Virus record (IMG/VR): IMGVR_UViG_3300005613_000001
Location: 124,001 to 188,000 of that record
DNA: 64,000 bases
Strand: one strand, 5' to 3'
Of the stretch, positions 1 to 32,054 are shown piece by piece (position 1 is the stretch's first letter; the number at the start of each line of letters is the position of its first letter). Under the pieces are notes generated by a model. That model was not told where the DNA came from and searched no databases. It saw nothing but the letters and a program-made list of their open reading frames with translations. A program made the position numbers and the translations under genes.

Positions 1-140
1 CATTACCCTAAACTGCTCGGCCATTGGCATAGTTTCAAAATGAACCGTTTCATACCCATAATGTTCAAACAGCTTCCTTATTTCCACTTCATTTTCAGCC
101 TTACGCCATTGAAGTTCCCTTGAAATGAATATTTTTCTAG
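1..140 (-). pseudogene. C-terminal half of a GT61/DUF563-like glycosyltransferase (runs off window edge, no start)
   Basis: Manual translation TRKIFISRELQWRKAENEVEIRKLFEHYGYETVHFETMPMAEQFRVM resembles the GT61 RKIYISR...N E..GFE...E.L..EQ motif; N-half is at 3220-3858. Confidence 0.7.
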
Positions 141-436
141 TTACGTAAAACAAATCGCTTGAAATCATTTGCTTTACCTAACTTCTGCCACATGGTAAAT
201 AATGAAACAATGCGATCCCAAGGATTTCGTGCAATTGTGAATTTAAAATAGTCCCTGCATTCTATTGGATGTTCAATTTCATATTTAGAAATCCACCAGT
301 GTTTGCCGGGATAAATAATATCACCACGTTCATCCAAATGAAGTTCGGGACGAAGAGCTTTAGCTATGCTGGTCCCGCCAGTTTTAGCCATGTGGATAAA
401 AATAAATTTATGCCGATGACAGATCATTTCAACCAC
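137..436 (-). pseudogene. Sulfotransferase family 2, N-terminal half (truncated)
   Basis: FIFIHMAKTGGTSI (5'-PSB) and FTIARNPWDRIVS (3'-PB) motifs; ends prematurely; matching C-half at 28790-29072. Confidence 0.7.
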
Positions 437-590
437 TCAACCAATGCATCGTAGTCAGCAAAATCCCGCTCTTCTAACCTATCATACGCAGCTAAATATC
501 CCGCCTCTATAAGAGAATCAAATGCAGCCGCTTTGGCTTTGCCTCCTAAAAAGTGAACCGGGACATCCTCACAATACGCTATAGTTACTT

Positions 591-812
591 TCATTTTTCA
601 AACCAATTATTTGTTTCTTCTTTTAACTTATCAGAACCCTTTTTTGCAGCATCTTGGACACCATCTTTCAGGGTGTTAAGTGGCTGTTCCACCTTCTGTC
701 TGACATTATCCACATCACGTTTAACCTTATATGCTTCAAATGCTACCATTGCTACAATAAATAAAATAACGGCTAGTAGAACTACAATGAGTCCCATAAA
801 TAAATTTTTCAT
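591..812 (-). CDS. Small membrane-anchored protein
   Basis: N-terminal hydrophobic helix then charged helical tail; GGAG RBS. Confidence 0.6.
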   Translation of the reverse strand: MKNLFMGLIVVLLAVILFIVAMVAFEAYKVKRDVDNVRQKVEQPLNTLKDGVQDAAKKGSDKLKEETNNWFEK

Positions 813-832
813 GTTAGTCTCCTTACTAACAC

Positions 833-1069
833 TTATATATCGTTATTAAACGTGGGTTTGGGACTTACCACACTCCCTTCTTTCTTGTATCTCTCAATCG
901 CCTCTTTTAATGTAGTACCACAACTACCAACTTGTTCTTCACCATCCTTCCACCAGGCATACTCTTTTAGCCCAGCAAGAAAACCGGCTTCGTAACCAGC
1001 ATCATATGCATTGTGCTCTAAATCACGCAACTCTTGTTCAATTCTAGGATCAATTTCTGGTTCGCTCAT
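833..1069 (-). CDS. Hypothetical phage protein
   Basis: Tightly packed ORF; YDAGYEAGF repeat, LKEYAWWKDG motif. Confidence 0.6.
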   Translation of the reverse strand: MSEPEIDPRIEQELRDLEHNAYDAGYEAGFLAGLKEYAWWKDGEEQVGSCGTTLKEAIERYKKEGSVVSPKPTFNNDI

Positions 1070-1773
1070 TTAATTGCCGCCTTGTAAATGAGTTCTACTA
1101 CGTTCTTCAACACCGGGTAACCCAACATCCAATGGTATTCATGTCTTCTAATTTGAATTGCCGTATGAACACCCTCAGCTATCTGCCCGTCTTGAAATTC
1201 AGGCTTTTCACCAGAGGCTATTAATTGTCCCGCCTTAAAATTTCTACTCTTGTTGCTGAGACACGTTACGGCTAAATCTGCCATGTGGCGATTTATAGAA
1301 GTAATCCCCTTTAATTCTTCCCACGCATCAGCAAAATATACAGCCGCCATATTATCGCCATTGGTGTGTTTTTCAATTGAATAACCAATAGCGTAAACAT
1401 TTTTAAGAACACCAACCCACTCTAACTCATTGTATCCATATGATATGTCCAATTTCTCCTCAGTGGAAATACAAGCGCCTCCTAAAACAGAGATATATTT
1501 AGATCCCCAAATATCCCGAATGGCTTGAGTAGGCAAGTGACCCTTGCTATCCAATCCCTTGGTTGCCGAATGGACCGTTATATCAGGATCAACTTCATCA
1601 AAAAGCTCCAGGGTTTCTCTTAAATATTGCCCTGGAATTGCTACGATAATCTTATCCGCCTCTTTTATTTCAAATGGATCTTCAGGATGATTCCACGTTT
1701 TGATCTTAAACTTGGGGGCAAATTCTTTTTTGAGGCGGGCTCCCCATTTACCTTGACCGAGTATGATAATCAT
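1066..1773 (-). CDS. gpsA: NAD(P)H-dependent glycerol-3-phosphate dehydrogenase-like
   Basis: GQGKWG Rossmann motif, SATKGL, LKNVYAIG, DLAVTCLS..SRNFKAG, AEGVHTA. Confidence 0.85.
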   Translation of the reverse strand: MIIILGQGKWGARLKKEFAPKFKIKTWNHPEDPFEIKEADKIIVAIPGQYLRETLELFDEVDPDITVHSATKGLDSKGHLPTQAIRDIWGSKYISVLGGACISTEEKLDISYGYNELEWVGVLKNVYAIGYSIEKHTNGDNMAAVYFADAWEELKGITSINRHMADLAVTCLSNKSRNFKAGQLIASGEKPEFQDGQIAEGVHTAIQIRRHEYHWMLGYPVLKNVVELIYKAAIK

Positions 1774-1776
1774 ACT

Positions 1777-2292
1777 CTAAGATAGTAATTCCGCGTCATC
1801 AATTGCTTTTATTATACCCCTCATCAGGCTAACGCTTATTGAAGAACCATTGTGCAAGGTAAAAACTTGCCCATCGTATGTCCCCATGTGCGCACCTTCC
1901 TTGGTTACAACCCTCTTTAAATACTCAGGATAAGTTTCATCTAAATCATCAAAACACACTTCCTGTATCAGCGGCTTCTTTCTTCGCCTCTTCCAAGATA
2001 ACTCATATATTTTTGCATCATAACTATCCTGATAATTCAACCAAAAAGTAGCAGGCATGTGAAAAACTTTTGAGAACTTGTGAGCTAACTCCTCCGTAAT
2101 AGGTGCTAGTTCCCATATAATTTCCTCTATCGTCTCAACATCTTCCTCTATTACAACACAAAAAGCTTGCAATTTAGCTTCAAATGACTTTGGAACTTCA
2201 CCCAAAACAGAGTAGTGTTCAATGCACTCCTTGAGCGTAGCACCCGGATGAACCGCGTAATCAGGATCAAATTTTTGAGGCGGGATAGCCAT
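1777..2292 (-). CDS. HigA-like antitoxin HTH domain plus extra C-terminal domain
   Basis: AVHPGATLKE...ITEELAHKFSKVF...FWLNYQDSYD is the HigA/VapI signature. Confidence 0.7.
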   Translation of the reverse strand: MAIPPQKFDPDYAVHPGATLKECIEHYSVLGEVPKSFEAKLQAFCVVIEEDVETIEEIIWELAPITEELAHKFSKVFHMPATFWLNYQDSYDAKIYELSWKRRRKKPLIQEVCFDDLDETYPEYLKRVVTKEGAHMGTYDGQVFTLHNGSSISVSLMRGIIKAIDDAELLS

Positions 2293-2293
2293 T

Positions 2294-3133
2294 TTAGAAC
2301 TCCCAGAAGGGCGACATTTTAGTAGATTGAGGAAGCAAATTCGCCTGTTCGCTTACACAACAAACGTTTTTACATTCTCCGTGGCATTCTCCATCGGCAG
2401 AAGGAGGAGCAGCCACACAATCATCTTCGCAATTATCTGCGGTTAAAACCCAATCATCATCGCTATCATTCCACTTCCATGAAGTGTAACCACAATCTCC
2501 ACATTCTATCTCCCAAGATGATGTATCGCAAGGGATAACTATATGGGCACCAAAATAATGAGGCGTAGTATCACTTGGAGTGGTGTCGCTAGGGGTGGCA
2601 CTTTCTCCATTTGGCCCCTCCCCACACGAATTTCTAACAAGCAGCCAGCCAGCTTGTTGAGTCCCTTGTGCGCCGCCTGGCAACGTTGCATCACCAATAT
2701 AAACCCAAGTCGCCGTACCCCTAGTGCATTTCTTCTCTACACACGGGAAATTCCACTCTGCCCCCGGTATATGGTCAGATGTTAATGAATCTGGGTAGGC
2801 AGGGTAACAACAGTCTTTGTCCGTACAATTATTTTCCAATAATGACCAAAAGTGAATCATCCTATTAGTGCCATTATCGTTCAAAAGCAAACTATAAGAC
2901 TTCCATTTTGCCTGACCGCAATTAATATGGGAAGTCTGCGTTGCGAAGTTTTGATGACAGCTTGAAGCACCATTTCTGATCGCTGTTAAATTAGAGGCGC
3001 GTGAATTGACCGTAGTATTATTGCGATTTAATGCCGACCAAGAAACCTTCCCATCGGGAGTGTTGGGCAATAAGTGAGTATTAGCCAAACCCGGTACGGT
3101 CTGTGTTCCACAATTATTCTGAATAGTCGGCAT
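2294..3133 (-). CDS. Cys-rich hypothetical protein
   Basis: 279-aa ORF, many Cys pairs, TPSDT repeat. Confidence 0.6.
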   Translation of the reverse strand: MPTIQNNCGTQTVPGLANTHLLPNTPDGKVSWSALNRNNTTVNSRASNLTAIRNGASSCHQNFATQTSHINCGQAKWKSYSLLLNDNGTNRMIHFWSLLENNCTDKDCCYPAYPDSLTSDHIPGAEWNFPCVEKKCTRGTATWVYIGDATLPGGAQGTQQAGWLLVRNSCGEGPNGESATPSDTTPSDTTPHYFGAHIVIPCDTSSWEIECGDCGYTSWKWNDSDDDWVLTADNCEDDCVAAPPSADGECHGECKNVCCVSEQANLLPQSTKMSPFWEF

Positions 3134-3219
3134 ACATTATTTAGGAACACACGAACATTTATCCATCCGGTTGTCCACAAAATCAACATAAACGGTATCG
3201 TCGTCTTTGTGATACACAT

Positions 3220-3858
3220 TCATGACATTGGCTCAACATAATCTTTTATGCCAGCAATGTGAAACATAATCTTGCGGACAAAAGGAAGGGCATAGTGGGG
3301 TATGTAAAATGTTCCTTTCTGGGTAACTGCCGAGGGTAATAAGTATTTTTCTAATCTCCAAATCGACGTTCGGGACATAAATTCAAAATCAACATTCGGA
3401 TATAGTTCTTGAATTGCCTTAAGCGCCTCTTGTTGATATGGTCCAGCAGTGTTATAGTGAAGTAGTGTAATCGGCTTCTTGAAACGCCTAAGAAAGACCA
3501 GCCGAGGAATTGCATCACACCAAAAGTGCCCATAATTATTTTGATTAGGACCAAAAAACGAGCTATAAAGACCCGTCTTATCTACTTGATCTTTTGAATA
3601 CTTTATTATCTCATTTAGCGTATGGGATGTTGTATTGCCAATTTTAAATAGAGTTTTTCTAACTCTGAGACGATCACCCAATCCATCTAAGATTATTTTC
3701 CCAGATGCAGCATCAACAACCATTGCCCCTGCAACAAAGAAATATACATCCTTAGCAATCCCATAATGAAAATCATATGCTATTGTAAAGTCAGATTTGT
3801 ACAGTTTATGTATTGAGGTTAAATCCTCTAATTTAACAAAACCCTTTAACTCAAGCAC
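3220..3858 (-). pseudogene. GT61/DUF563-like glycosyltransferase, N-terminal half (truncated)
   Basis: NYGHFWCDAIPRL motif; stops exactly where RKIFISR should follow; C-half at 1-140. Confidence 0.7.
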
Positions 3859-3860
3859 TC

Positions 3861-4256
3861 TTAGCTCCCAAAACCTAAATCGCTAAAATCTAATTTTGTT
3901 CCAGGGCCTCTTTTTTTATCCTTGGGCTTTCGTTGGCGAACTCTTATGTATGCAACGTATTTGCCAGTGGGTCTTTCATATTTGTCTATGATTTCCCGGT
4001 ATTCTACATCTAGATTGAAAAAGGGGCTCTCGTAGCGTATCAACTCTTTGATTTGAGCCAATACTGAATTAATAAAGTGTGATGAGCCCGTAATTCTAAT
4101 TGTATCCTGATTATATGTAGAGCCTTTATGATTGGGGGGAATTGGATGAGGCATCATGGGCTGATCTTTTAAAGACGCCCAGTGCCTTAATATCTCATCG
4201 CGGGCTGCTTTCCAGCCTGCTTTTTGCTCTTCTATTAACCAATCACGAAACTCCAT
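3861..4256 (-). CDS. Hypothetical phage protein (MEFRDWL N-terminus)
   Basis: 131-aa ORF in gene chain. Confidence 0.65.
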   Translation of the reverse strand: MEFRDWLIEEQKAGWKAARDEILRHWASLKDQPMMPHPIPPNHKGSTYNQDTIRITGSSHFINSVLAQIKELIRYESPFFNLDVEYREIIDKYERPTGKYVAYIRVRQRKPKDKKRGPGTKLDFSDLGFGS

Positions 4257-6030: not shown

Positions 6031-6419
6031 ATATCTGGTGGTTCTTCTACACTTTCTACTATGTATGTTCCTGTGCCGTCTTCATTCCAATCAATAGAAC
6101 CCGCAATCATCTTGCCAGATTGAAACGCAAGATTGGCACTTAACATCCGAGCATCATCATCACTTGTCACTGAAAACTGGTCGCCAACCTTAATATAAAG
6201 AGGCGGGGGACGCTTGCCAAATATGCTAGCAATTGCCGTTGTGGCAGCAAAAACAACAACTACAGTAAGCCACATCAATCCAAATGAAACAACAAGACAA
6301 AGGAAACCTATACCAATGTTTAACGTTTCAACTCCAAGCCAACTCTTCACCAAATAAACTGCTAGCACATGGTATCCTATAGTAATGCCCGCCGCAATTA
6401 AATAAACGAAATAATGCAT
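6012..6419 (-). CDS. Membrane protein (two TM segments); stop codon lies inside tRNA-Glu
   Basis: Hydrophobic N-half. Confidence 0.6.
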   Translation of the reverse strand: MHYFVYLIAAGITIGYHVLAVYLVKSWLGVETLNIGIGFLCLVVSFGLMWLTVVVVFAATTAIASIFGKRPPPLYIKVGDQFSVTSDDDARMLSANLAFQSGKMIAGSIDWNEDGTGTYIVESVEEPPDMAPSSS

Positions 6420-7174
6420 TACTCCGCCTCCGTGAAAACGTGTCGGCAGCCTATCTTGTACAAAAAATCGGCATACATCCTAACATTCCTCCCCCTAGCT
6501 CGCCTCTTCATTTTACGACAAACTTGTTTCAAATTTAACTTTTGCCACTTGCGGAACCCGGATTCGTCAGCCCAAGGAGGCAACCAGTTATACCAACTCT
6601 TAAAATATCGCCACGCTAGAAACATCCCTCTTTGTAAATCATGGTTAAAACCACTCATCCAAAAGTGATCGAATAAGTCCCGACCATCACCTTGATCTCT
6701 ATAATCATCCCATATATGTCGGGCTGTGCATATATGCCATGCATCATGAATGTTCGGAAGAGGAGGACGATACAAAAGACTTCGTGTACTTTTAATAGGC
6801 TCCGTTGCAAAAGCAACATACAAATGTTGATTCCCCACCCTCGCCATTATCACGTAGGGAAATTGAAGATGGTAAGCTTTATCATAATAATAAATCGTTC
6901 GTTTTTGAGGCGGATATTCCCTTATCTCCACAGACATTTTCTTGATTATTGTGCGATAATTTCTAGTTTCCCCTAATGCTCTATCTCTTTCCTTCCGCCT
7001 CTTTTTTTCTGCTTTTTCTCTTTCTTTTCTCGCTATTTCCTTTAAGACTTTTTTTAATTTCTTTCTCACGCCCGCTTTGGGACGCCCAATTTTCTTTGCT
7101 AGAGCTTCAATACCCATAGTCTCATTATGCTCTAGCAATACCGCCACTTCATCTTTTGTCCATCGTTTAGCCAT
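6419..7174 (-). CDS. HTH/coiled-coil + prokaryotic E2 family D-like domain
   Basis: YHLQFPYV...LYVAFATEPIKS...LYRPPLPNIHDAWHIC. Confidence 0.6.
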   Translation of the reverse strand: MAKRWTKDEVAVLLEHNETMGIEALAKKIGRPKAGVRKKLKKVLKEIARKEREKAEKKRRKERDRALGETRNYRTIIKKMSVEIREYPPQKRTIYYYDKAYHLQFPYVIMARVGNQHLYVAFATEPIKSTRSLLYRPPLPNIHDAWHICTARHIWDDYRDQGDGRDLFDHFWMSGFNHDLQRGMFLAWRYFKSWYNWLPPWADESGFRKWQKLNLKQVCRKMKRRARGRNVRMYADFLYKIGCRHVFTEAE

Positions 7175-26558: not shown

Positions 26559-26843
26559 ATGAAATCTTCAGCTTCATTACTTTGGCTAATTGGTGGCCTT
26601 TTTGTTGCTTTCTTATTTATAAACACCATTGGCGGCTGTAGGGCTTATATGTCACCTTGGCGTTTTTTCCAGCCAAGAGTTCAAGTGCATCACACAACAC
26701 CATCAGTAGGTGTTCATTTCAGCCCCAGCCACAGATCATGGTGGAATCCATTCCGCCATTCAGATCATAGAAGGCATGATTATTACAATCGCGGGCATGG
26801 TCATAATCGTCATGGTCACGGCCATCACGGACATCGGAGGTAA
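26559..26843 (+). CDS. Secreted/lipoprotein-like His-rich protein
   Basis: Signal-like helix, GGC, His/Gly tail. Confidence 0.6.
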   Translation: MKSSASLLWLIGGLFVAFLFINTIGGCRAYMSPWRFFQPRVQVHHTTPSVGVHFSPSHRSWWNPFRHSDHRRHDYYNRGHGHNRHGHGHHGHRR

Positions 26844-26844
26844 T

Positions 26845-27513
26845 ATGAAAATAGCAGCTTCATTTGTTTGGTTAGTGCTGGGTCTGGTTGGAGCCTTTAT
26901 ACTCGTTGGTTGGCTAGGTTGTGGCAGAGCCCTTAATTCTTGGAGGGCTCCCGATCCACAACCAATAATCCACCCGCCAGTTCGGACTCAACCAATTCAT
27001 CAGCCGCCCCCTGTTTATCGTAATACAAATCCATTCAATCGATTTGATAGGAACGATCATCCATATCATGATCGGCGTTATGATGAATATATGAGGCGAA
27101 AGCATGGTGATAATTGGTATCGAGAAAATCACCGATACGATCCAGATTATAAATATTACTATGACTATAGAAATGCGGATAGGCACAAACCAAAACCAGA
27201 TTTAAAAAAACCAGAACGGCCAGAACCGAATTTTAAAAAGCCGGAAGCCCGTCCTGAGCCACGACCTGAACCCCGTCCAGAACTGAAGCCAGATAAATCA
27301 AAACCAGATTTTGATAAAGGTCGCGGGCATGGACACGATAATGATAGGCACGATCACGATAAACATAGACATCGCCAAGATGAGCCGCTTTCAGACGGCC
27401 CAAAGCCTCCCTCGGGGGCGGGCGATGCCACACAGGGGTTTGACCCATCCAACCCCCACGGACCTAGCAACCACCGATATCCTTGGCAACCAAGGGTGGG
27501 ATTGCAGAGATAA
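26845..27513 (+). CDS. Secreted/lipoprotein-like protein with Pro/Glu and His repeats (start MKIAASF)
   Basis: GGAGG RBS; paralogous N-terminus to 26559; PEPR repeats. Confidence 0.6.
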   Translation: MKIAASFVWLVLGLVGAFILVGWLGCGRALNSWRAPDPQPIIHPPVRTQPIHQPPPVYRNTNPFNRFDRNDHPYHDRRYDEYMRRKHGDNWYRENHRYDPDYKYYYDYRNADRHKPKPDLKKPERPEPNFKKPEARPEPRPEPRPELKPDKSKPDFDKGRGHGHDNDRHDHDKHRHRQDEPLSDGPKPPSGAGDATQGFDPSNPHGPSNHRYPWQPRVGLQR

Positions 27514-27899: not shown

Positions 27900-28385
27900 T
27901 TAGCTCCACAGCTTAGCTCTAGCTACATTCAATATTATTTCAACACATTCGTCAATAGTATTCTGGTCCGTTTCAACCACAATATCGGGATTCACCGGGG
28001 GGTCAAAGGGAGCATCATATCCCGTAAATCCCTTAATTTCCCCAGCTTTAGCCTTTGCGTACATACCCTTTACATCTCTCTCAGAGCAAACTTCCACGGG
28101 GCACTTCACATAGACCATGATATCAACGTCTAGCTTCTTCCTGACTTCTTCCGATGGTGACACGAAAGAGCAAAAAACGTTAGTGTATTTGCCGAGCATT
28201 TTGGCAAGATAACCCACTCTCAAAAGATGCCTCTCTCGCTCTTCGGGTGAGAAACCAATCCCTTTAGAAAAATCACTATTTCGTAAAACATCACCGTCTA
28301 AAAGCTCACCGCCCATACGTTTTACTAATATTTCTGCTAAAGTAGTTTTTCCACTACAAGGAAGTCCAGTTAGCCAAATTATCAT
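27900..28385 (-). CDS. cysC: Adenylylsulfate (APS) kinase
   Basis: IWLTGLPCSGKTT; LDGD..R; CSERDVKGMY.KA.AGEIKGFTG.DAPF. Confidence 0.93.
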   Translation of the reverse strand: MIIWLTGLPCSGKTTLAEILVKRMGGELLDGDVLRNSDFSKGIGFSPEERERHLLRVGYLAKMLGKYTNVFCSFVSPSEEVRKKLDVDIMVYVKCPVEVCSERDVKGMYAKAKAGEIKGFTGYDAPFDPPVNPDIVVETDQNTIDECVEIILNVARAKLWS

Positions 28386-28394
28386 ATCTCTCCT

Positions 28395-28640
28395 TTATAC
28401 TGGGAATTGAATCCCATCACCCATTTCAATAGGAATAATACCATCATGCATTAAAGGCATCTGAGCCTGCATTGTAATAACAAGCATCTTACCAGAATTC
28501 TGCTCTATTCTATCTAAAAAATAGCCTTCATCTGCTCGTTGATTCAACACCTGACTTAAATCACTCGCCTCAGTTATTATATCTACCTTATAAACATTAT
28601 CTTTTTCTTCGCTCATTGCTATCTCCTTCCCCAATATCAT
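28395..28640 (-). CDS. Hypothetical protein
   Basis: ORF chain. Confidence 0.5.
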   Translation of the reverse strand: MILGKEIAMSEEKDNVYKVDIITEASDLSQVLNQRADEGYFLDRIEQNSGKMLVITMQAQMPLMHDGIIPIEMGDGIQFPV

Positions 28641-28812
28641 AGCTAGAATCTTTTAAAAAATCAAGTGGGTAGATAGGAGATGCCCCTGGCGGCAGTTCTT
28701 GAATATCAAAGATTTTATTTGCTATATCGGTATGATTAATTGGAAATCTACACCCGCCCAAACACCATGCCCACGCCATAGCTTCTTCTTCACTCATCTT
28801 TTCCGAACTCAT
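28597..28812 (-). CDS. Hypothetical protein
   Basis: ORF chain. Confidence 0.45.
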   Translation of the reverse strand: MSSEKMSEEEAMAWAWCLGGCRFPINHTDIANKIFDIQELPPGASPIYPLDFLKDSSYDIGEGDSNERRKR

Positions 28813-29072
28813 ATCCCAAAACCTCTATTTCTTTGTGGCAATCTTCCGCCACCCTATCCCTCGTTTCCTCATCATAAAACGTTGAATAATGGGGGCGGTC
28901 AATTTTATTTAACACAGGAAGGGCCAAACGGGGAACCTCAATTCTATCACAAATCTCATCAAAACTAGCCTGTAAGTTTTCAAAGCGGCCTATGAAATCA
29001 ACCGCTATATTGCCTCCTTTATCAATCACCCGATCAAACCAGGAAGGTAGCGGACCCCCACAGGAAGCTTCA
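28790..29072 (-). pseudogene. Sulfotransferase family 2, C-terminal half (no N-terminus)
   Basis: VDFIGRFENL...N...HYSTFYD.ET...V...EIE..GYEF; open frame back to 29074. Confidence 0.7.
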
Positions 29073-29191
29073 TTTTACGACAAAATTGTTGTAAAATGAG
29101 CGTAGGACTGTTATAGGCATGTACTTTTACTTCTACTGATCTTAAGGCTGATGTGTTCATTTTCTTCTCTTTTTCTTTCAATCTAATTAGC

Positions 29192-29512
29192 TTACTTTCC
29201 ACCAATTTTTAGCAGAATAAATCCAATTCCTACAAAAAAAGTCCCCACCCATTGATATGTCGTAAATTTAGCAGCCGAACCCATAATCAACAGTGTCCCA
29301 TAGAAGGTAAAATAAATAATCAGATCATAAAGCAGACCATCAAATATTAGATTCTTTGAATACCGAGCTATAATCGGCCACAACCCCAAGAAATTACACC
29401 CATAGAGGATAATTACCCATTTCCACTCATCGCTCTCATTTGCGTATTTTGATATTACACCAACAAAGATGTACAAAAATATCGCAGTAATAACCCAAAA
29501 TGCGTAAAACAT
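29192..29512 (-). CDS. Small multi-TM membrane protein
   Basis: Four hydrophobic segments. Confidence 0.6.
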   Translation of the reverse strand: MFYAFWVITAIFLYIFVGVISKYANESDEWKWVIILYGCNFLGLWPIIARYSKNLIFDGLLYDLIIYFTFYGTLLIMGSAAKFTTYQWVGTFFVGIGFILLKIGGK

Positions 29513-29603
29513 ACCCTAATAGAGTTTGCAATAACGCAAAAGAAATGCTATAATGATATCACTGGACCCAGAACATTGCCTTGCCCTTATGTTTTGGGTT
29601 TCC

Positions 29604-30344
29604 TCACTTGTCGTGAGGAATTACTGGCCCGTGCCCCTTTCCCCCAATGGGGGAAAGGGGCTTTTTTAATTTAGGCAATTCGGACAAATGAGAGAATGCT
29701 ACAGTAACAATCTTCTTGCCAATCCACGGGTAATGTTCTCGTAAATTTGCTCTCGATGGGGCTCGGGCAACAAAAGTACGCCTATTTCTCTTGCGATGTA
29801 AATGCCAAGCATGAATTGAAGAAGCAGGATTTTGCAAGTTGTAACCAAACTTCTCTGCAAGGTCCGCTATTACGTGGTCACAAAAGTCTATACCTAAACT
29901 AACATTCTTGGCAAACACCTTTATAGGTGTATCAAAAATCCAAGCATCCCCGGCTCCAACCTTTCTCTTGTGAAAATCGGGGTGCTGTGACGGGCTACAT
30001 TCCGTGCGAGTAAGATGTATGAATACCCCTTTTAAATCGTACCTATTTAATGCCCTGAGTGACTTATCAAAGTAAATATCACCATTTGCTATAATTGCTC
30101 TCCCAGTTTCATTATTCGCTAATTCAAACATTTCGCCATAATTAGGACGCATCTTACAAGATACAACCTCTACTTGTGGTAGTAAGTCTTTAAATTCAAC
30201 TGCAATGTCTTCCGTTTCCAAAAATAAAAAAACCTTCTTGATAAAAGGATTATCTATATTTCTTCTAAGACATTCAACATATTCCCTGGTCCTATCACAA
30301 GGCTTTGCTTTAAAAGTGGTTAATAAATTGTATTTATATCTCAT
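29604..30344 (-). CDS. GT-A-like hypothetical protein
   Basis: IIANGDIYFD, DAWIF, CD motifs; glyco-island context. Confidence 0.55.
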   Translation of the reverse strand: MRYKYNLLTTFKAKPCDRTREYVECLRRNIDNPFIKKVFLFLETEDIAVEFKDLLPQVEVVSCKMRPNYGEMFELANNETGRAIIANGDIYFDKSLRALNRYDLKGVFIHLTRTECSPSQHPDFHKRKVGAGDAWIFDTPIKVFAKNVSLGIDFCDHVIADLAEKFGYNLQNPASSIHAWHLHRKRNRRTFVARAPSRANLREHYPWIGKKIVTVAFSHLSELPKLKKPLSPIGGKGHGPVIPHDK

Positions 30345-30374
30345 TTTTCCGCCCTCAGTATTTATATTAGTATA

Positions 30375-31031
30375 ATGGCTTATTTACTATCATTCCCCCG
30401 GTGTGGCAATACTTGGGTGACAAAAATGCTTTTTAATTACTGTTGTGAAGTCTATAATCACGACAAAATTGATATACAAATGGGGAAAGGGCAAAGAAAA
30501 AGAAGAAAGAAAGGGGCACTCAACTATTTAGCAGTTGGAGATTTCTCATGGTGTGAATTCTACTCACATTGCATGACCTTCCATTGCCCCGAAGAAAGAA
30601 AAATACCAATACAAAAACATCATGATCTTGGCATATTCGATAAAAGGTTGAGAATTCTAAATTATGACCCAAATGATAAATATGTCATATTAATTAGAAA
30701 CCCTATTCACTCCATAATTTCTTGGTATGAACTATACACAAAAAAAGACCCCTGGGAACCATTCGCCAGGAGTCGGGCAAAGTTTTGGAATAATTTTACA
30801 AAAAAATGGGTTCTACCCAAATATGAAAATGCTCTATATTTACACTACGAAACCCTAGTCAAAAACACAAATCCTCAATTAAAAAAAATTATCAATTTTG
30901 TGGGTTTGCCATTAAAAACTAAATACCTCCAATTCTCGCCCCATGATCATATTAGAACCCTAGATGGCTCATATGATACAAGAGAAATAGAAGATATAAC
31001 AAAAAAACTCTATTCTAAAGTTGCTCCTTGA
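30375..31031 (+). CDS. Sulfotransferase domain protein
   Basis: LLSFPRCGNTW; LIRNP..SIISWY; LHYETL. Confidence 0.8.
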   Translation: MAYLLSFPRCGNTWVTKMLFNYCCEVYNHDKIDIQMGKGQRKRRKKGALNYLAVGDFSWCEFYSHCMTFHCPEERKIPIQKHHDLGIFDKRLRILNYDPNDKYVILIRNPIHSIISWYELYTKKDPWEPFARSRAKFWNNFTKKWVLPKYENALYLHYETLVKNTNPQLKKIINFVGLPLKTKYLQFSPHDHIRTLDGSYDTREIEDITKKLYSKVAP

Positions 31032-31296
31032 AATCTAAATCAGACTTCTTTTCAGAATGAGTCTTCTCTTTAAACCACTTTCTTGGATTACCACAAGCCG
31101 CACAAGAGCACTGTGCCAAGTGGTCGCCCAAATGCTCCGCTAATTCGGGACGCATCCAATGAAAAACTCTACGCGCCTGCATCTTCTTACGACGCTTGTG
31201 CTTACGACGCTCTGCTCTCTTAGACATGATCGATTCTCCTTGTTGGGGGTCGGCCCCTCTTGTTGGGAATGATCGATCATTTTCGTGATAGTTCAT
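31015..31296 (-). CDS. Small basic protein (start probably MSKRAE)
   Basis: CSCAACGNPRK motif. Confidence 0.55.
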   Translation of the reverse strand: MNYHENDRSFPTRGADPQQGESIMSKRAERRKHKRRKKMQARRVFHWMRPELAEHLGDHLAQCSCAACGNPRKWFKEKTHSEKKSDLDFKEQL

Positions 31297-31325
31297 TTCT
31301 ATATCTACCTTTACTACATAAAATT

Positions 31326-32054
31326 ATGAAACGTGCCATCTTCGTACACGCACTGCATAAAAGTGCAACAATGTTCTTGTATAAGTTTTTTAAACACTAC
31401 GCTAAACAAGCTAGAATTAAATATTATTCGCCTAATAATGAAAAAGTCAACAAATTAGATGACCTAAATGAAAATGAAACCAACTTTTGCTGCTGCCCTG
31501 TTAGACAATTTGCCAAACACTATCAAGGTCATACATATAAAGAAATTACTAAGTTAGTCCTAAATTATAATTCTCCTGAAACCTATAGAATATATCATAT
31601 CAGAGATCCTAGAGATCTGCTTGTGTCACAATACTTCAGCGTGGCTTATATTCATGCACTGCACGAAAAACTTACAGTAGAACAGCGAGAAAAATATCAA
31701 AAAATGACCGTAGATGACTTCTGTATGAAATGGGCGGACCAGACGCTTGAAAGATATGAAAGTATTTTTACTGTGACCGCTAAACGTAAATTAATTGTAA
31801 AATACGAACAAATGGTATTGGACTACCCTAAATGGCTCTCTAAAATCGCCTCTTTTTTATCAATTCCTCCAGAAATAAAACGTGATCTTAGAAGAAAATT
31901 TAAAAGAGAATTTATACCGCCCATTAAAGAACGAATGAAACACAAACGTAAAATGATCCCCGGTGACTATAAAGAAAAATTAAAACCCTCTACCATAAAA
32001 CAACTTGACTCTAAGTTCAGTCAAATTTTAGAGGCGTTCTATCCAAATACTTGA
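31326..32054 (+). CDS. Sulfotransferase domain protein (start MKRAIF)
   Basis: HKSATMF; RDPRDLLVSQYFS; KYEQM; RK..PGDYKE.L. Confidence 0.8.
   Translation: MKRAIFVHALHKSATMFLYKFFKHYAKQARIKYYSPNNEKVNKLDDLNENETNFCCCPVRQFAKHYQGHTYKEITKLVLNYNSPETYRIYHIRDPRDLLVSQYFSVAYIHALHEKLTVEQREKYQKMTVDDFCMKWADQTLERYESIFTVTAKRKLIVKYEQMVLDYPKWLSKIASFLSIPPEIKRDLRRKFKREFIPPIKERMKHKRKMIPGDYKEKLKPSTIKQLDSKFSQILEAFYPNT

What the first reader, a model, noticed from the sequence alone, without database searches (positions are those of the whole stretch)
141..3227. A 3.1-kb block appears translocated: moving it to 29072 repairs two split genes
Seen: a GT61-like gene breaks at 3228 (..DYVEP) and resumes at 140 (TRKIFISR). 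Deleting 141-3227 gives an in-frame EPTRKIFISR at a shared AA. The sulfotransferase N-half (..FVLRN, ends ~141) joins in frame, also at AA, to the orphan C-half starting at 29072 (EASCGGPLPSWF..VDFIGRFENL). If an AA duplication is allowed, the orphan start at 29160 (MNTSALRS..FCR) also joins the orphan tail at 3227 (NVMNVYHKDD..VPK) into a 58-aa ORF. Only 2-4 nt of microhomology are present, with no transposase or terminal repeats, which is unlike a repeat-driven misassembly. An imperfect palindrome (29071-29098) sits at the donor junction. Inference: recent illegitimate cut-and-paste, a programmed switch, or an assembly/processing artefact.
Basis: partly seen in the sequence, partly recalled or inferred. 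Interest (0 to 1): 0.6.

Follow-up and report, generated by a model that had tools for sequence, protein, structure and literature searches.

The report
Seamless 3.1-kb gene-block translocation in a huge phage
In a 527-kb phage genome, a 3.1-kb block of seven genes was cut out of a sulfation gene cluster and pasted 26 kb away into a glycosyltransferase gene; this broke two enzyme genes, lost no bases, and is a real one-off rearrangement rather than an assembly error.

Summary
The window is part of a 527,112-bp virus record. On the minus strand, a GT61-type glycosyltransferase gene is split at 3228/3229 and 140. A Sulfotransfer_2-type gene is split between 140-436 and 28790-29071.

Full-length homologues and profiles place each pair of pieces collinearly:
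- The two GT61 pieces abut exactly.
- The two sulfotransferase halves do not overlap; they flank a variable segment of the profile.
- Two intact sulfotransferase paralogues lie elsewhere in the same genome.

The donor site sits in a sulfation island (APS kinase, other sulfotransferases).

All three junctions recur in other assemblies: an ENA MEGAHIT contig, and contigs from two JGI metagenomes. One JGI dataset has homopolymer indels that suggest another sequencing chemistry. Misassembly is therefore very unlikely. No ancestral allele was found anywhere.

All three ancestral sites carry AA at the break, so the exchange is either fully conservative or gains 2 bp. The block has no terminal repeats and no transposase, and no Rfam RNA family, intron or other, matched at E ≤ 0.5.

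My best reading is a recent, one-off, non-homologous excision and reinsertion at AA dinucleotides that left pseudogene fragments. The junctions look like a serine-recombinase reaction, and the genome has one IS607-family element, but that link is unproven. Reads could not be tested.

The parts
143..3227 (-). Translocated block, core M (3,085 bp; 3,087 bp if one flanking AA is counted). It carries the 3' part of a small ORF (or a 28-aa ORF), a 279-aa Cys-rich ORF, a 171-aa HTH/antitoxin-like ORF, a GpsA-like ORF, ORFs of 78, 73 and 56 aa, and the sulfotransferase N-half.
   Evidence: exact junction sequences; no terminal repeats; gene content, no transposase.
3228..3229 (-). AA dinucleotide at junction J1 (acceptor left flank X | block start).
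   Evidence: GAGCC AA TGTCATG.
141..142 (-). AA dinucleotide at junction J2 (block end | acceptor right flank Y).
   Evidence: TTTTACGT AA CTAGAAA.
29073..29076 (-). Donor scar J3: AAAA between flank L (..TGTCGT) and flank R (TGAAGC..).
   Evidence: The same scar is in the JGI 3300005346 contig and the ENA contig.
3228..3858 (-). GT61-type glycosyltransferase, N-terminal piece (210 aa). The ORF now ends ..EPMS* at 3220.
   Evidence: PF04577 positions 1-47 (weak); aligns directly upstream of the C-piece in P0091, P0081 and P0123; positions 112-232 of a 374-position profile.
1..140 (-). GT61-type glycosyltransferase, C-terminal piece (168 aa). It continues left of the window to L001:1138. An in-frame ATG at 168 gives a called 177-aa ORF.
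   Evidence: PF04577 positions 59-136, E=2e-14; in full-length homologues it starts at residue about 205-300; profile positions 242-370.
140..436 (-). Sulfotransfer_2-type sulfotransferase, N-half (99 aa, PAPS-binding end). Its stop TAG at 139-137 lies in acceptor DNA.
   Evidence: PF03567 positions 4-99 of 252. PHROG 3347 positions 5-98 of 219; aligns to residues 1-88 of 197-aa viral homologues.
28790..29071 (-). Sulfotransferase C-half (93 aa plus stop), left behind at the donor site.
   Evidence: PHROG 3347 positions 147-217; residues 105-197 of the same homologues; own-genome paralogues carry both halves contiguously.
29077..29160 (-). Head of a small ORF (MNTSALRS..FCR), upstream of the donor scar.
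   Evidence: codon score +0.17 in frame; -1.5 and -1.0 out of frame.
3137..3229 (-). Tail reading frame NVMNVYHKDD..VPK*. It is either the 3' part of a 58-aa ORF or an independent 28-aa ORF from the ATG at 3223-3221 (ATGA overlap). Its stop lies 3 nt before the ATG of the 279-aa gene.
   Evidence: codon score +0.39, typical of in-frame coding.
29070..29099 (.). Near-perfect palindrome (14-nt arms, 2-nt spacer). Its left arm contains the scar.
6506..6528 (-). Second copy (22 of 23 nt, including an exact 17-mer) of the sequence spanning the donor scar. It lies inside the 251-aa ORF, in the same reading frame.
   Evidence: E=6.7e-5 against the whole genome.
3230..3242 (-). 13-mer ATTATGTTGAGCC abutting the acceptor crossover. 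Its only other copy in the genome lies near the left end of the IS607-family element.
   Evidence: (2 copies, 0.02 expected).
27900..28385 (-). APS kinase, donor-site context (sulfation island).
   Evidence: PF01583, E=1e-38.
30375..31031 (+). Sulfotransfer_1-type sulfotransferase, donor-site context. A second one lies further right.

Best explanation
This is a real and evolutionarily recent rearrangement of the phage genome. A 3,085-bp segment, native to a sulfation gene island, was excised and re-inserted in the same orientation 25.8 kb away, inside a GT61-type glycosyltransferase gene. In the ancestor the segment lay between a small ORF and the C-terminal half of a sulfotransferase gene.

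The event split the glycosyltransferase, the sulfotransferase and probably a small ORF. The pieces are now pseudogene fragments, or at best fragments expressed by accident.

All three ancestral sites carry AA exactly at the break. The three new joints keep every base, except for a possible 2-bp gain at the donor.

I commit to the following mechanism: a one-off, non-homologous break-and-join in which three breaks at AA dinucleotides were rejoined through 2-4 nt of identity. The moved segment was handled as one physical piece. The event is not programmed, not reversible and not repeat-driven.

Shown: the split genes, their complementarity, the exact junctions, and the recurrence of the junctions in other assemblies.
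Inferred: the direction of the move, its recency, the mechanism, and loss of function.
For: Complementary pieces:
- PHROG 3347 matches the sulfotransferase N-half at positions 5-98 and the C-half at 147-217.
- Viral homologues of 197-254 aa align to the N-half at residues 1-88 and to the C-half at 105-197.
- Two intact paralogues lie in the same genome.
- The GT61 C-piece begins at about residue 205-300 of 330-440-aa homologues.
- The GT61 N-piece aligns directly upstream in the same proteins, for example P0091 at 89-196 and then 205-315.
- On a 374-position profile the GT61 pieces cover 112-232 and 242-370. The 10 unaligned residues fill the gap.

Direction of the move:
- The donor lies beside an APS kinase and two Sulfotransfer_1 genes.

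Not an artefact:
- The ENA MEGAHIT k141 contig is collinear over all three junctions, with a constant offset and 2 SNPs.
- The 52-kb contig JGI10211J14876 covers J1 and J2.
- JGI 3300005346 contigs cover J2 and J3 and carry homopolymer indels, which suggest a different sequencing chemistry.

Junction logic.

Recency: all four gene pieces are still open, with coding-like codon scores.

No mobile-element features: no terminal repeats, no transposase in the block, and no Rfam family, intron or other, at E ≤ 0.5; the one hit at E 0.54 is an unrelated sRNA far below its gathering score.
Against: - No ancestral (unrearranged) allele or close relative was found. The ancestral state is therefore a reconstruction.
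- The other assemblies may come from related samples of one population, so fixation elsewhere is unknown.
- Ordinary end joining usually loses or adds bases. A three-junction exchange with nothing lost, and with the segment not permuted, is unusually clean for a random event. That fits an enzyme making 2-nt staggered cuts better.
- Two sequence coincidences at the junctions (a 17/23-nt copy at window 6506-6528 and a 13-mer shared with the IS607 element) are not explained by this model.
- Raw reads could not be examined.
Confidence: 0.6

Rival explanations
1. A serine-recombinase (IS607-type) reaction acting in trans. The phage's own IS607-family transposase TnpA excised the block as a circle by exchange over an identical AA core dinucleotide at its two ends. 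It then integrated the circle at an AA in the GT61 gene, treating ordinary gene sequence as pseudo-ends.
For: - The junction signature matches what is published for IS607-family transposition: no terminal inverted repeats, no target duplication, exchange over an identical 2-bp core present at both termini and the target, precise donor joints, and a circular intermediate (PMC6188088; bioRxiv 10.1101/2023.11.20.567912).
- It explains why nothing is lost at three junctions, and why the segment re-opened exactly at its joint.
- The genome has exactly one such element, with a MerR-HTH plus Resolvase TnpA, a TnpB and a conserved small upstream ORF.
- A 13-mer abutting the acceptor crossover recurs only once in 527 kb, near the left end of that element. 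My rough estimate is p of about 0.01-0.02 after allowing for the comparisons made.
Against: - The block has no tnpA and no recognisable subterminal repeat motifs or similarity to the IS ends.
- Published elements need about 40-60 bp of specific end sequence and use GG, not AA.
- IS607 tnpA has to lie close to the ends it acts on; here it is about 90-120 kb away.
- The core dinucleotide of this phage's element could not be determined.
- If the ancestral donor had AA rather than AAAA, the event gained 2 bp, which strict serine-recombinase chemistry does not do.
Confidence: 0.2
2. A replication-based template-switching or templated-repair event. The donor gap was closed using the near-identical sequence at window 6506-6528 as a splint, adding 2 nt. 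The segment was copied or pasted at the acceptor through 2-nt microhomologies.
For: - The 17-mer TTTGTCGTAAAATGAAG spanning the scar occurs once more in the genome.
- Counting one mismatch, the match extends to 22 of 23 nt, with E=6.7e-5.
- It equals the last 10 nt of L+AA followed by the first 7 nt of AA+R.
- This model allows the 58-aa small ORF to have been intact in the ancestor. The tail has coding-like codon usage.
Against: - The similarity to window 6506-6528 extends about 17 nt further upstream at 11 of 17 matches, in the same reading frame. It may therefore be an older short paralogy, with only 3 extra matching bases due to chance (1 in 64).
- Independent template switches would not be expected to delete and insert exactly the same 3,085 bp.
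- The tail has its own ATG, so its coding signal does not require the 58-aa fusion.
Confidence: 0.1
3. Assembly or library artefact (chimeric contig, or a mix of strains).
For: Only consensus assemblies were seen, not reads. The datasets could share an origin, since identity is 99.75-100%.
Against: - The same three junctions occur in a k=141 de Bruijn assembly, a 52-kb JGI contig and short JGI contigs with a different error profile. These differ from the record by SNPs and indels.
- 2-4 nt of identity cannot create a graph join.
- An artefact would not restore two genes when reversed, each at the residue expected from homologues.
Confidence: 0.03
4. A programmed or reversible switch, or deliberately split genes whose halves work as separate subunits.
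For: - Both GT61 pieces and both sulfotransferase pieces remain open reading frames.
- The GT61 C-piece has acquired an in-frame ATG.
- Short C-terminal-only GT61 entries exist in the protein library, though many may be truncated contig-end calls.
Against: - There are no inverted or direct recombination sites.
- Only one configuration appears in every dataset.
- No relative has the split arrangement.
- The sulfotransferase C-half has no proper start at the junction.
Confidence: 0.03

Closest known systems
IS607-family (serine transposase TnpA) transposition
   Same: No terminal inverted repeats; no target-site duplication (if the ancestral donor had AAAA); the same dinucleotide at both ends of the moved DNA and at the target; a seamless donor joint; orientation preserved. 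A complete element of this family is present in the same genome.
   Different: The moved block carries no tnpA or tnpB and no recognisable end motifs. The core would be AA rather than the published GG. It is native gene DNA whose removal breaks genes at the donor, so it is not an insertion sequence.
Illegitimate (short-homology) recombination in phage genomes, i.e. deletions and insertions at 2-10 nt repeats, often near palindromes (established knowledge from T4/T7/lambda genetics; recalled, not tested here)
   Same: Microhomologies of 2-4 nt at every joint. The donor ends sit in an imperfect direct repeat, CGTAA(AA)TG. A palindrome lies at one breakpoint. It is a single event with no dedicated sites.
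   Different: The classical cases are simple deletions or duplications. Here the deleted segment was conserved base for base and re-inserted unpermuted elsewhere.
Modular cassette shuffling in T4-type phages via repeated regulatory stem-loops (PeSL cassettes; recalled from the literature, not tested here)
   Same: A multi-gene cassette relocated within a large phage genome, possibly through a circular intermediate.
   Different: No repeated flanking regulatory elements. The breakpoints lie inside coding sequences and destroy genes.

Membership tests
Glycosyltransferase family 61 / PF04577 (identity of the acceptor gene) | Match to the PF04577 profile above the curated cut-off | tested here: met
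   C-piece: 54.4 bits against a cut-off of 27, profile positions 59-136. The N-piece alone is below the cut-off (15.2 bits, positions 1-47).
Glycosyltransferase family 61 / PF04577 (identity of the acceptor gene) | The two pieces together cover one full-length homologue collinearly, without overlap or gap | tested here: met
   profile positions 112-232 and 242-370 of 374. P0091: 89-196 then 205-315.
Sulfotransfer_2 / PHROG 3347 sulfotransferase (identity of the donor gene) | Both halves match the same family at complementary profile positions | tested here: met
   positions 5-98 and 147-217 of 219. PF03567 positions 4-99, 31.4 bits against a cut-off of 22, for the N-half. The C-half has no Pfam hit.
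IS607-family insertion sequence (is the block one?) | Encodes a serine transposase (MerR-type HTH N-terminal to a Resolvase catalytic domain) | tested here: not met
   None of the block's ORFs hits Resolvase, MerR or any transposase. The only such gene lies at G000 245,059-245,703.
IS607-family insertion sequence (is the block one?) | Short, directly repeated subterminal motifs at both ends | tested here: not met
   No repeated 7-mers at the block's end, and one unremarkable 7-mer repeat at its start. No significant similarity of either end to the phage IS ends.
IS607-family insertion sequence (is the block one?) | Identical core dinucleotide at both termini and the target; no TIR; no target duplication | tested here: inconclusive
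   An AA dinucleotide at all three sites and the absence of TIRs are shown. Absence of duplication holds only if the ancestral donor had AAAA, which cannot be decided.
DDE cut-and-paste transposon with a 2-bp target duplication (Tc1/mariner/IS630-like) | Terminal inverted repeats and a DDE transposase | tested here: not met
   No TIRs. No transposase in the block.
IS200/IS605 (Y1 HUH) element | Y1 transposase present in the genome; subterminal hairpins | tested here: not met
   PF01797 is absent from the 527-kb record. No end hairpins were found in the block.
Group I/II intron or IStron interrupting GT61 | Match to an intron or ribozyme covariance model | tested here: not met
   Rfam E-value scan of 1-4000: only one chance-level hit, at E=0.54, to an unrelated sRNA.

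The most novel reading that the evidence does not exclude
The phage's IS607-family serine transposase, or another enzyme that makes 2-nt staggered cuts, mobilised a 3.1-kb stretch of ordinary phage genes in trans through pseudo-sites that share only an AA core, seamlessly and by way of a circle. That would make serine transposases a route for scarless gene-block shuffling in huge phage genomes, beyond moving their own insertion sequences.
Probability: 0.15. Interest if true: 0.65.

Novelty: new member of a known kind. Interest (0 to 1): 0.38.

Why it matters
The finding is a clean natural example, resolved to the base, of how gene order changes in a very large phage genome. One physical segment moved 26 kb, no bases were lost, and both the donor scar and the acceptor joints are preserved while the broken genes are still undecayed. 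Such fresh events are rarely caught, and they constrain the mechanism: identity of 2 nt at all three sites, and a segment that was not permuted.

On the practical side, four ORFs here (212, 177, 99 and 79 aa as called) are gene fragments. They should not be annotated or counted as separate protein families. The 177-aa 'GT61' and 212-aa entries already sit in public protein collections as if they were whole proteins.

If the serine-transposase reading were confirmed, it would extend what IS607-type enzymes are known to move.

Tried and rejected
Searches for relatives or an ancestral allele that found nothing useful:
- Megablast of both regions against 50,697 phage records: no match.
- Word-based search for relatives of the GT61 N-piece, the 279-aa ORF and the GpsA-like ORF in IMG/VR: none. 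No syntenic relative is available.
- The search for homologous proteins with the GT61 N-piece returned only the protein itself. Its length window (115-367 aa) would miss a 378-aa ancestral protein.
- The exhaustive representative search with the C-piece also found no near-identical full-length protein.
- The metagenome scan with the sulfotransferase N-half found only one near-identical locus, and it is rearranged in the same way.

Tests of specific mechanisms:
- TnpB-guided cleavage: no 10-mer or longer is shared between the DNA downstream of the three tnpB genes and any junction flank.
- Type II topoisomerase and Y1 transposase: both absent from the record.
- GIY-YIG endonucleases are present, but the I-TevI-type CNNNG cleavage motif (recalled from memory) is not at the sites when checked by eye.
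- Defining the ends and core dinucleotide of the phage's IS607 element failed. There is a single copy, no empty site in other assemblies, and DNA similarity to the closest relative starts only inside the small ORF.

Other attempts:
- Codon-usage scoring of the tail ORF could not decide between AA and AAAA in the ancestor, because the tail has its own ATG.
- mafft --addfragments misplaced the end of the GT61 N-piece. It was replaced by an HMM coordinate test.
- A paper search for JGI id 3300005346 gave nothing.

- Joined (repaired) proteins were not sent to any search or folding tool. Each piece was searched by reference. Only 62-66-nt junction strings were translated, in a local script.


Full report
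**Setting.** The window is G000:C1:124001-188000 of a 527,112-bp IMG/VR virus record. Nearly all genes in the region lie on the minus strand. No phage record in GenBank/INPHARED matches either region by megablast.

**Checking the observation.** All coordinates below are on the minus strand.
- An ORF at 3858..3220 ends ..IAGIKDYVEP-MS*.
- A second frame opens at 140 with TRKIFISRELQW.. and runs 501 bp beyond the left edge of the window (L001 1138-1641).
- A 99-aa ORF at 436..137 ends ..FKRFVLRN*.
- At 29071 an open frame begins EASCGGPLPSWF..VDFIGRFENL.. and ends at 28790.

The junction sequences were read out:
- J1 = GAGCC AA TGTCATG (AA at 3229-3228).
- J2 = TTTTACGT AA CTAGAAA (AA at 142-141).
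- J3 = TTGTCGT AAAA TGAAGC (AAAA at 29076-29073).

Removing 141-3227 gives ..DYVEPTRKIFISR in frame. Joining the block end to 29072 gives ..FVLRNEASCGG in frame.

The palindrome is 29070-29083 / 29086-29099, with 14-nt arms that are 93% complementary. The block has no terminal direct or inverted repeats.

**Are the pieces halves of single genes? Sulfotransferase.**
- Pfam Sulfotransfer_2 matches the N-half at profile positions 4-99 of 252.
- PHROG 3347 (219 positions) matches the N-half at 5-98 (E=6e-12) and the C-half at 147-217 (E=7e-10).
- Eight viral loci encode full-length relatives of 197-254 aa. In the 197-aa protein of L002 the N-half aligns to residues 1-88 and the C-half to 105-197.
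- The same genome has two intact paralogues, at G000 222045-222719 and 461427-460861, in which both halves align contiguously.

**Are the pieces halves of single genes? GT61.**
- The C-piece matches PF04577 positions 59-136 (E=2e-14). The N-piece matches positions 1-47 weakly.
- An exhaustive HMMER search with the C-piece gave 6,403 hits. In single-domain homologues of 330-440 aa the match starts at about residue 205-300, which leaves room for an N-terminal part of about 210 aa.
- Searching the N-piece against those same 149 proteins placed it immediately upstream:
  - P0091: N-piece at 89-196, C-piece from 205.
  - P0081: N-piece at 184-285, C-piece from 301.
  - P0123: N-piece at 137-240, C-piece from 250.
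- On an HMM built from ten full-length homologues (374 positions), the N-piece covers 112-232 using its residues 74-200. The C-piece covers 242-370 from its residue 1. The ten unaligned C-terminal residues of the N-piece fill the nine-to-ten-position gap.

That criterion is not met. I searched each piece by reference and did not submit joined proteins to any search or folding tool.

**Direction of the move.** The donor site lies in a sulfation island: an APS kinase at 27900-28385 (E=1e-38) and two Sulfotransfer_1 genes just to the right. The sulfotransferase N-half travels with the block. The block is therefore native to about 29072 and foreign to the GT61 gene. Swapping the adjacent 25.8-kb segment instead would be formally equivalent.

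**Artefact or real?** The same arrangement occurs in three further assemblies.
- ENA ERZ27256772 contig k141_1531274 (238,844 bp, MEGAHIT):
  - 100% identical over J1 and J2.
  - 99.97% identical over J3, with 2 SNPs.
  - A constant coordinate offset of 70,825 on both sides and again 115 kb further on.
- JGI10211J14876_10000018 (52 kb): 99.99% identical over J1 and J2.
- JGI 3300005346:
  - A 1,703-bp contig is 100% identical over J2.
  - A 2,002-bp contig over J3 has four homopolymer indels and one substitution 3 nt from the scar. That error profile suggests another sequencing chemistry.

A k=141 graph cannot be misjoined through 2-4 nt of identity. The samples may be related, so I claim that the arrangement is real, not that it is universal. 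No ancestral allele was found in any search.

**Anatomy of the exchange.** Write the ancestral donor as L-[A1]-M-[A2]-R and the acceptor as X-[A3]-Y.

The two gene repairs fix A2 = M+AA+R and A3 = X+AA+Y. For A1 there are two options:
- (i) L+AAAA+M. All three joints are then strictly conservative, with microhomologies of 4 nt (AATG), 2 nt and 2 nt. The small ORF would have ended ..FCRKMS*, with an ATGA overlap onto a 28-aa ORF.
- (ii) L+AA+M. A 58-aa ORF is restored, and the event gained 2 bp.

The tail frame has coding-like codon usage: +0.39, against +0.29±0.15 for in-frame windows and -1.0±0.64 for out-of-frame windows. It has its own ATG, however, so this does not decide between the options.

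In either case:
- The same 3,085 bp were removed and inserted, unpermuted and in the same orientation. The segment therefore moved as one physical piece.
- All three sites carry the same dinucleotide at the break. By my rough estimate this would happen by chance about once in a hundred blunt events.

**Candidate agents.** The block encodes none.

The genome holds one complete IS607-family element, at about G000 243.87-245.87 kb:
- A conserved small ORF, a TnpA with a MerR-type HTH plus a Resolvase domain, and a TnpB.
- The small ORF is conserved upstream of tnpA in relatives from Saccharibacteria, Altiarchaeales, cyanobacteria and others.

The genome also holds two further tnpB genes and two GIY-YIG endonucleases. 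It has no Y1 transposase and no type II topoisomerase.

Published work shows that IS607-family transposition has these properties (PMC6188088; bioRxiv 10.1101/2023.11.20.567912):
- No TIRs and no target duplication.
- Exchange over an identical core dinucleotide at both ends and the target.
- Precise donor joints and a circular intermediate.

That is the junction signature seen here under option (i). Against this reading:
- Those elements use GG.
- They need 40-60 bp of specific end motifs.
- The transposase has to be encoded close to the ends it acts on.
- The block's ends show no similarity to the IS ends.

I therefore rate this as a minority hypothesis (about 0.2).

**Two unexplained coincidences.**
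- The 13-mer abutting the acceptor crossover (3242..3230) has only one other copy in 527 kb (0.02 expected). That copy lies at the start codon of the IS607 small ORF.
- The 17-mer spanning the donor scar recurs once, inside the 251-aa ORF at window 6506-6528:
  - Counting one mismatch, the match extends to 22 of 23 nt, with E=6.7e-5.
  - It is in the same reading frame, and the next 17 nt upstream match at 11 of 17.
  - It could be a repair template that supplied the extra AA, or a short older paralogy. The second reading would favour option (i).

TnpB guide matches were looked for and not found. No Rfam family of any kind matches 1-4000 at E ≤ 0.5; the single hit, at E=0.54, is an unrelated sRNA far below its gathering score.

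**Verdict.**
An artefact is very unlikely, and a programmed switch is unsupported.
- The event is ordinary in kind (a genome rearrangement that makes pseudogene fragments) but unusually clean. That cleanness, together with the resident serine transposase, leaves a modest chance of something more interesting.
- Overall interest is moderate to low.

Noticed in passing
G000:C1 about 243,870-245,870 (L035 1869-3869, minus strand); outside the window: A complete IS607-family element: a 64-aa ORF, a TnpA (MerR HTH plus Resolvase, 215 aa) and a TnpB (397 aa). The small upstream ORF (..VTKTEFE..DG..EVPT.EEFQ..YD.W) is conserved in front of tnpA in relatives from Saccharibacteria, Actinomycetota, Altiarchaeales and a cyanobacterium. 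It looks like a third gene of this subfamily.
   Followed up: partly
G000:C1 112,832-114,019 (-) and 101,821-102,921 (+); 10-22 kb left of the window: Two further TnpB paralogues (31-33% identity to the IS607 TnpB) with no adjacent serine transposase detected.
   Followed up: no
L035 3957-4779 (G000 245,957-246,779, minus strand): A GIY-YIG endonuclease ORF (217 aa), preceded by and overlapping a 71-aa MerR-type HTH ORF that is 45-49% identical to the N-terminus of the neighbouring TnpA. It may be a frameshifted HTH-GIY-YIG fusion or a remnant of a second IS607.
   Followed up: no
window 6506-6528 (minus strand, inside the 251-aa ORF 6419..7174): 22 of 23 nt are identical to the sequence spanning the donor scar, including an exact 17-mer. 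It is in the same reading frame (VCRKMK against FCRKMK). It is the only second copy in the genome (E=6.7e-5).
   Followed up: partly
window 3230-3242 and G000 245,860-245,872: The 13-mer ATTATGTTGAGCC occurs exactly twice in 527 kb (0.02 expected): abutting the acceptor crossover, and at the start of the IS607 small ORF. A related stretch, TTATGTTGA, also lies 36 nt inside the block.
   Followed up: partly
window 29070 (L011 position about 1432): The JGI 3300005346 contig has T where the window's minus strand reads A, 3 nt from the scar. This puts a TAG in the orphan frame and changes the first codon of the sulfotransferase C-half (GAA to GTA). It could be a real variant or a sequencing error, since that contig also has four homopolymer indels.
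   Followed up: partly
window 27900-31700, and G000 222,045-222,719 and 460,861-461,427: The phage carries a sulfation toolkit: an APS kinase, two Sulfotransfer_1 genes on the opposite strand, the broken Sulfotransfer_2 gene, and two intact Sulfotransfer_2 paralogues elsewhere.
   Followed up: partly
window 1066-1773 (minus strand): A shortened NAD-dependent glycerol-3-phosphate dehydrogenase (GpsA-like, 235 aa) inside the moved block, next to a 171-aa ORF with an HTH/antitoxin-like match (phrog_1381) and a 279-aa Cys-rich ORF with no relatives.
   Followed up: no
window 26710-27513 (plus strand): A 267-aa ORF on the opposite strand to its neighbours, with a highly charged, repetitive His/Pro/Asp/Lys/Arg-rich tail (..PEPRPEPRPE..HDNDRHDHDKHRHR..). 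It may be a real low-complexity protein or an antisense artefact.
   Followed up: no
L012 8981-12534 (left of the window, G000 about 118-121 kb): Translation-related genes typical of huge phages sit close by: a Thg1-like enzyme, a class I tRNA synthetase domain, a phosphoribosyltransferase and a small Gp23-like hit.
   Followed up: no
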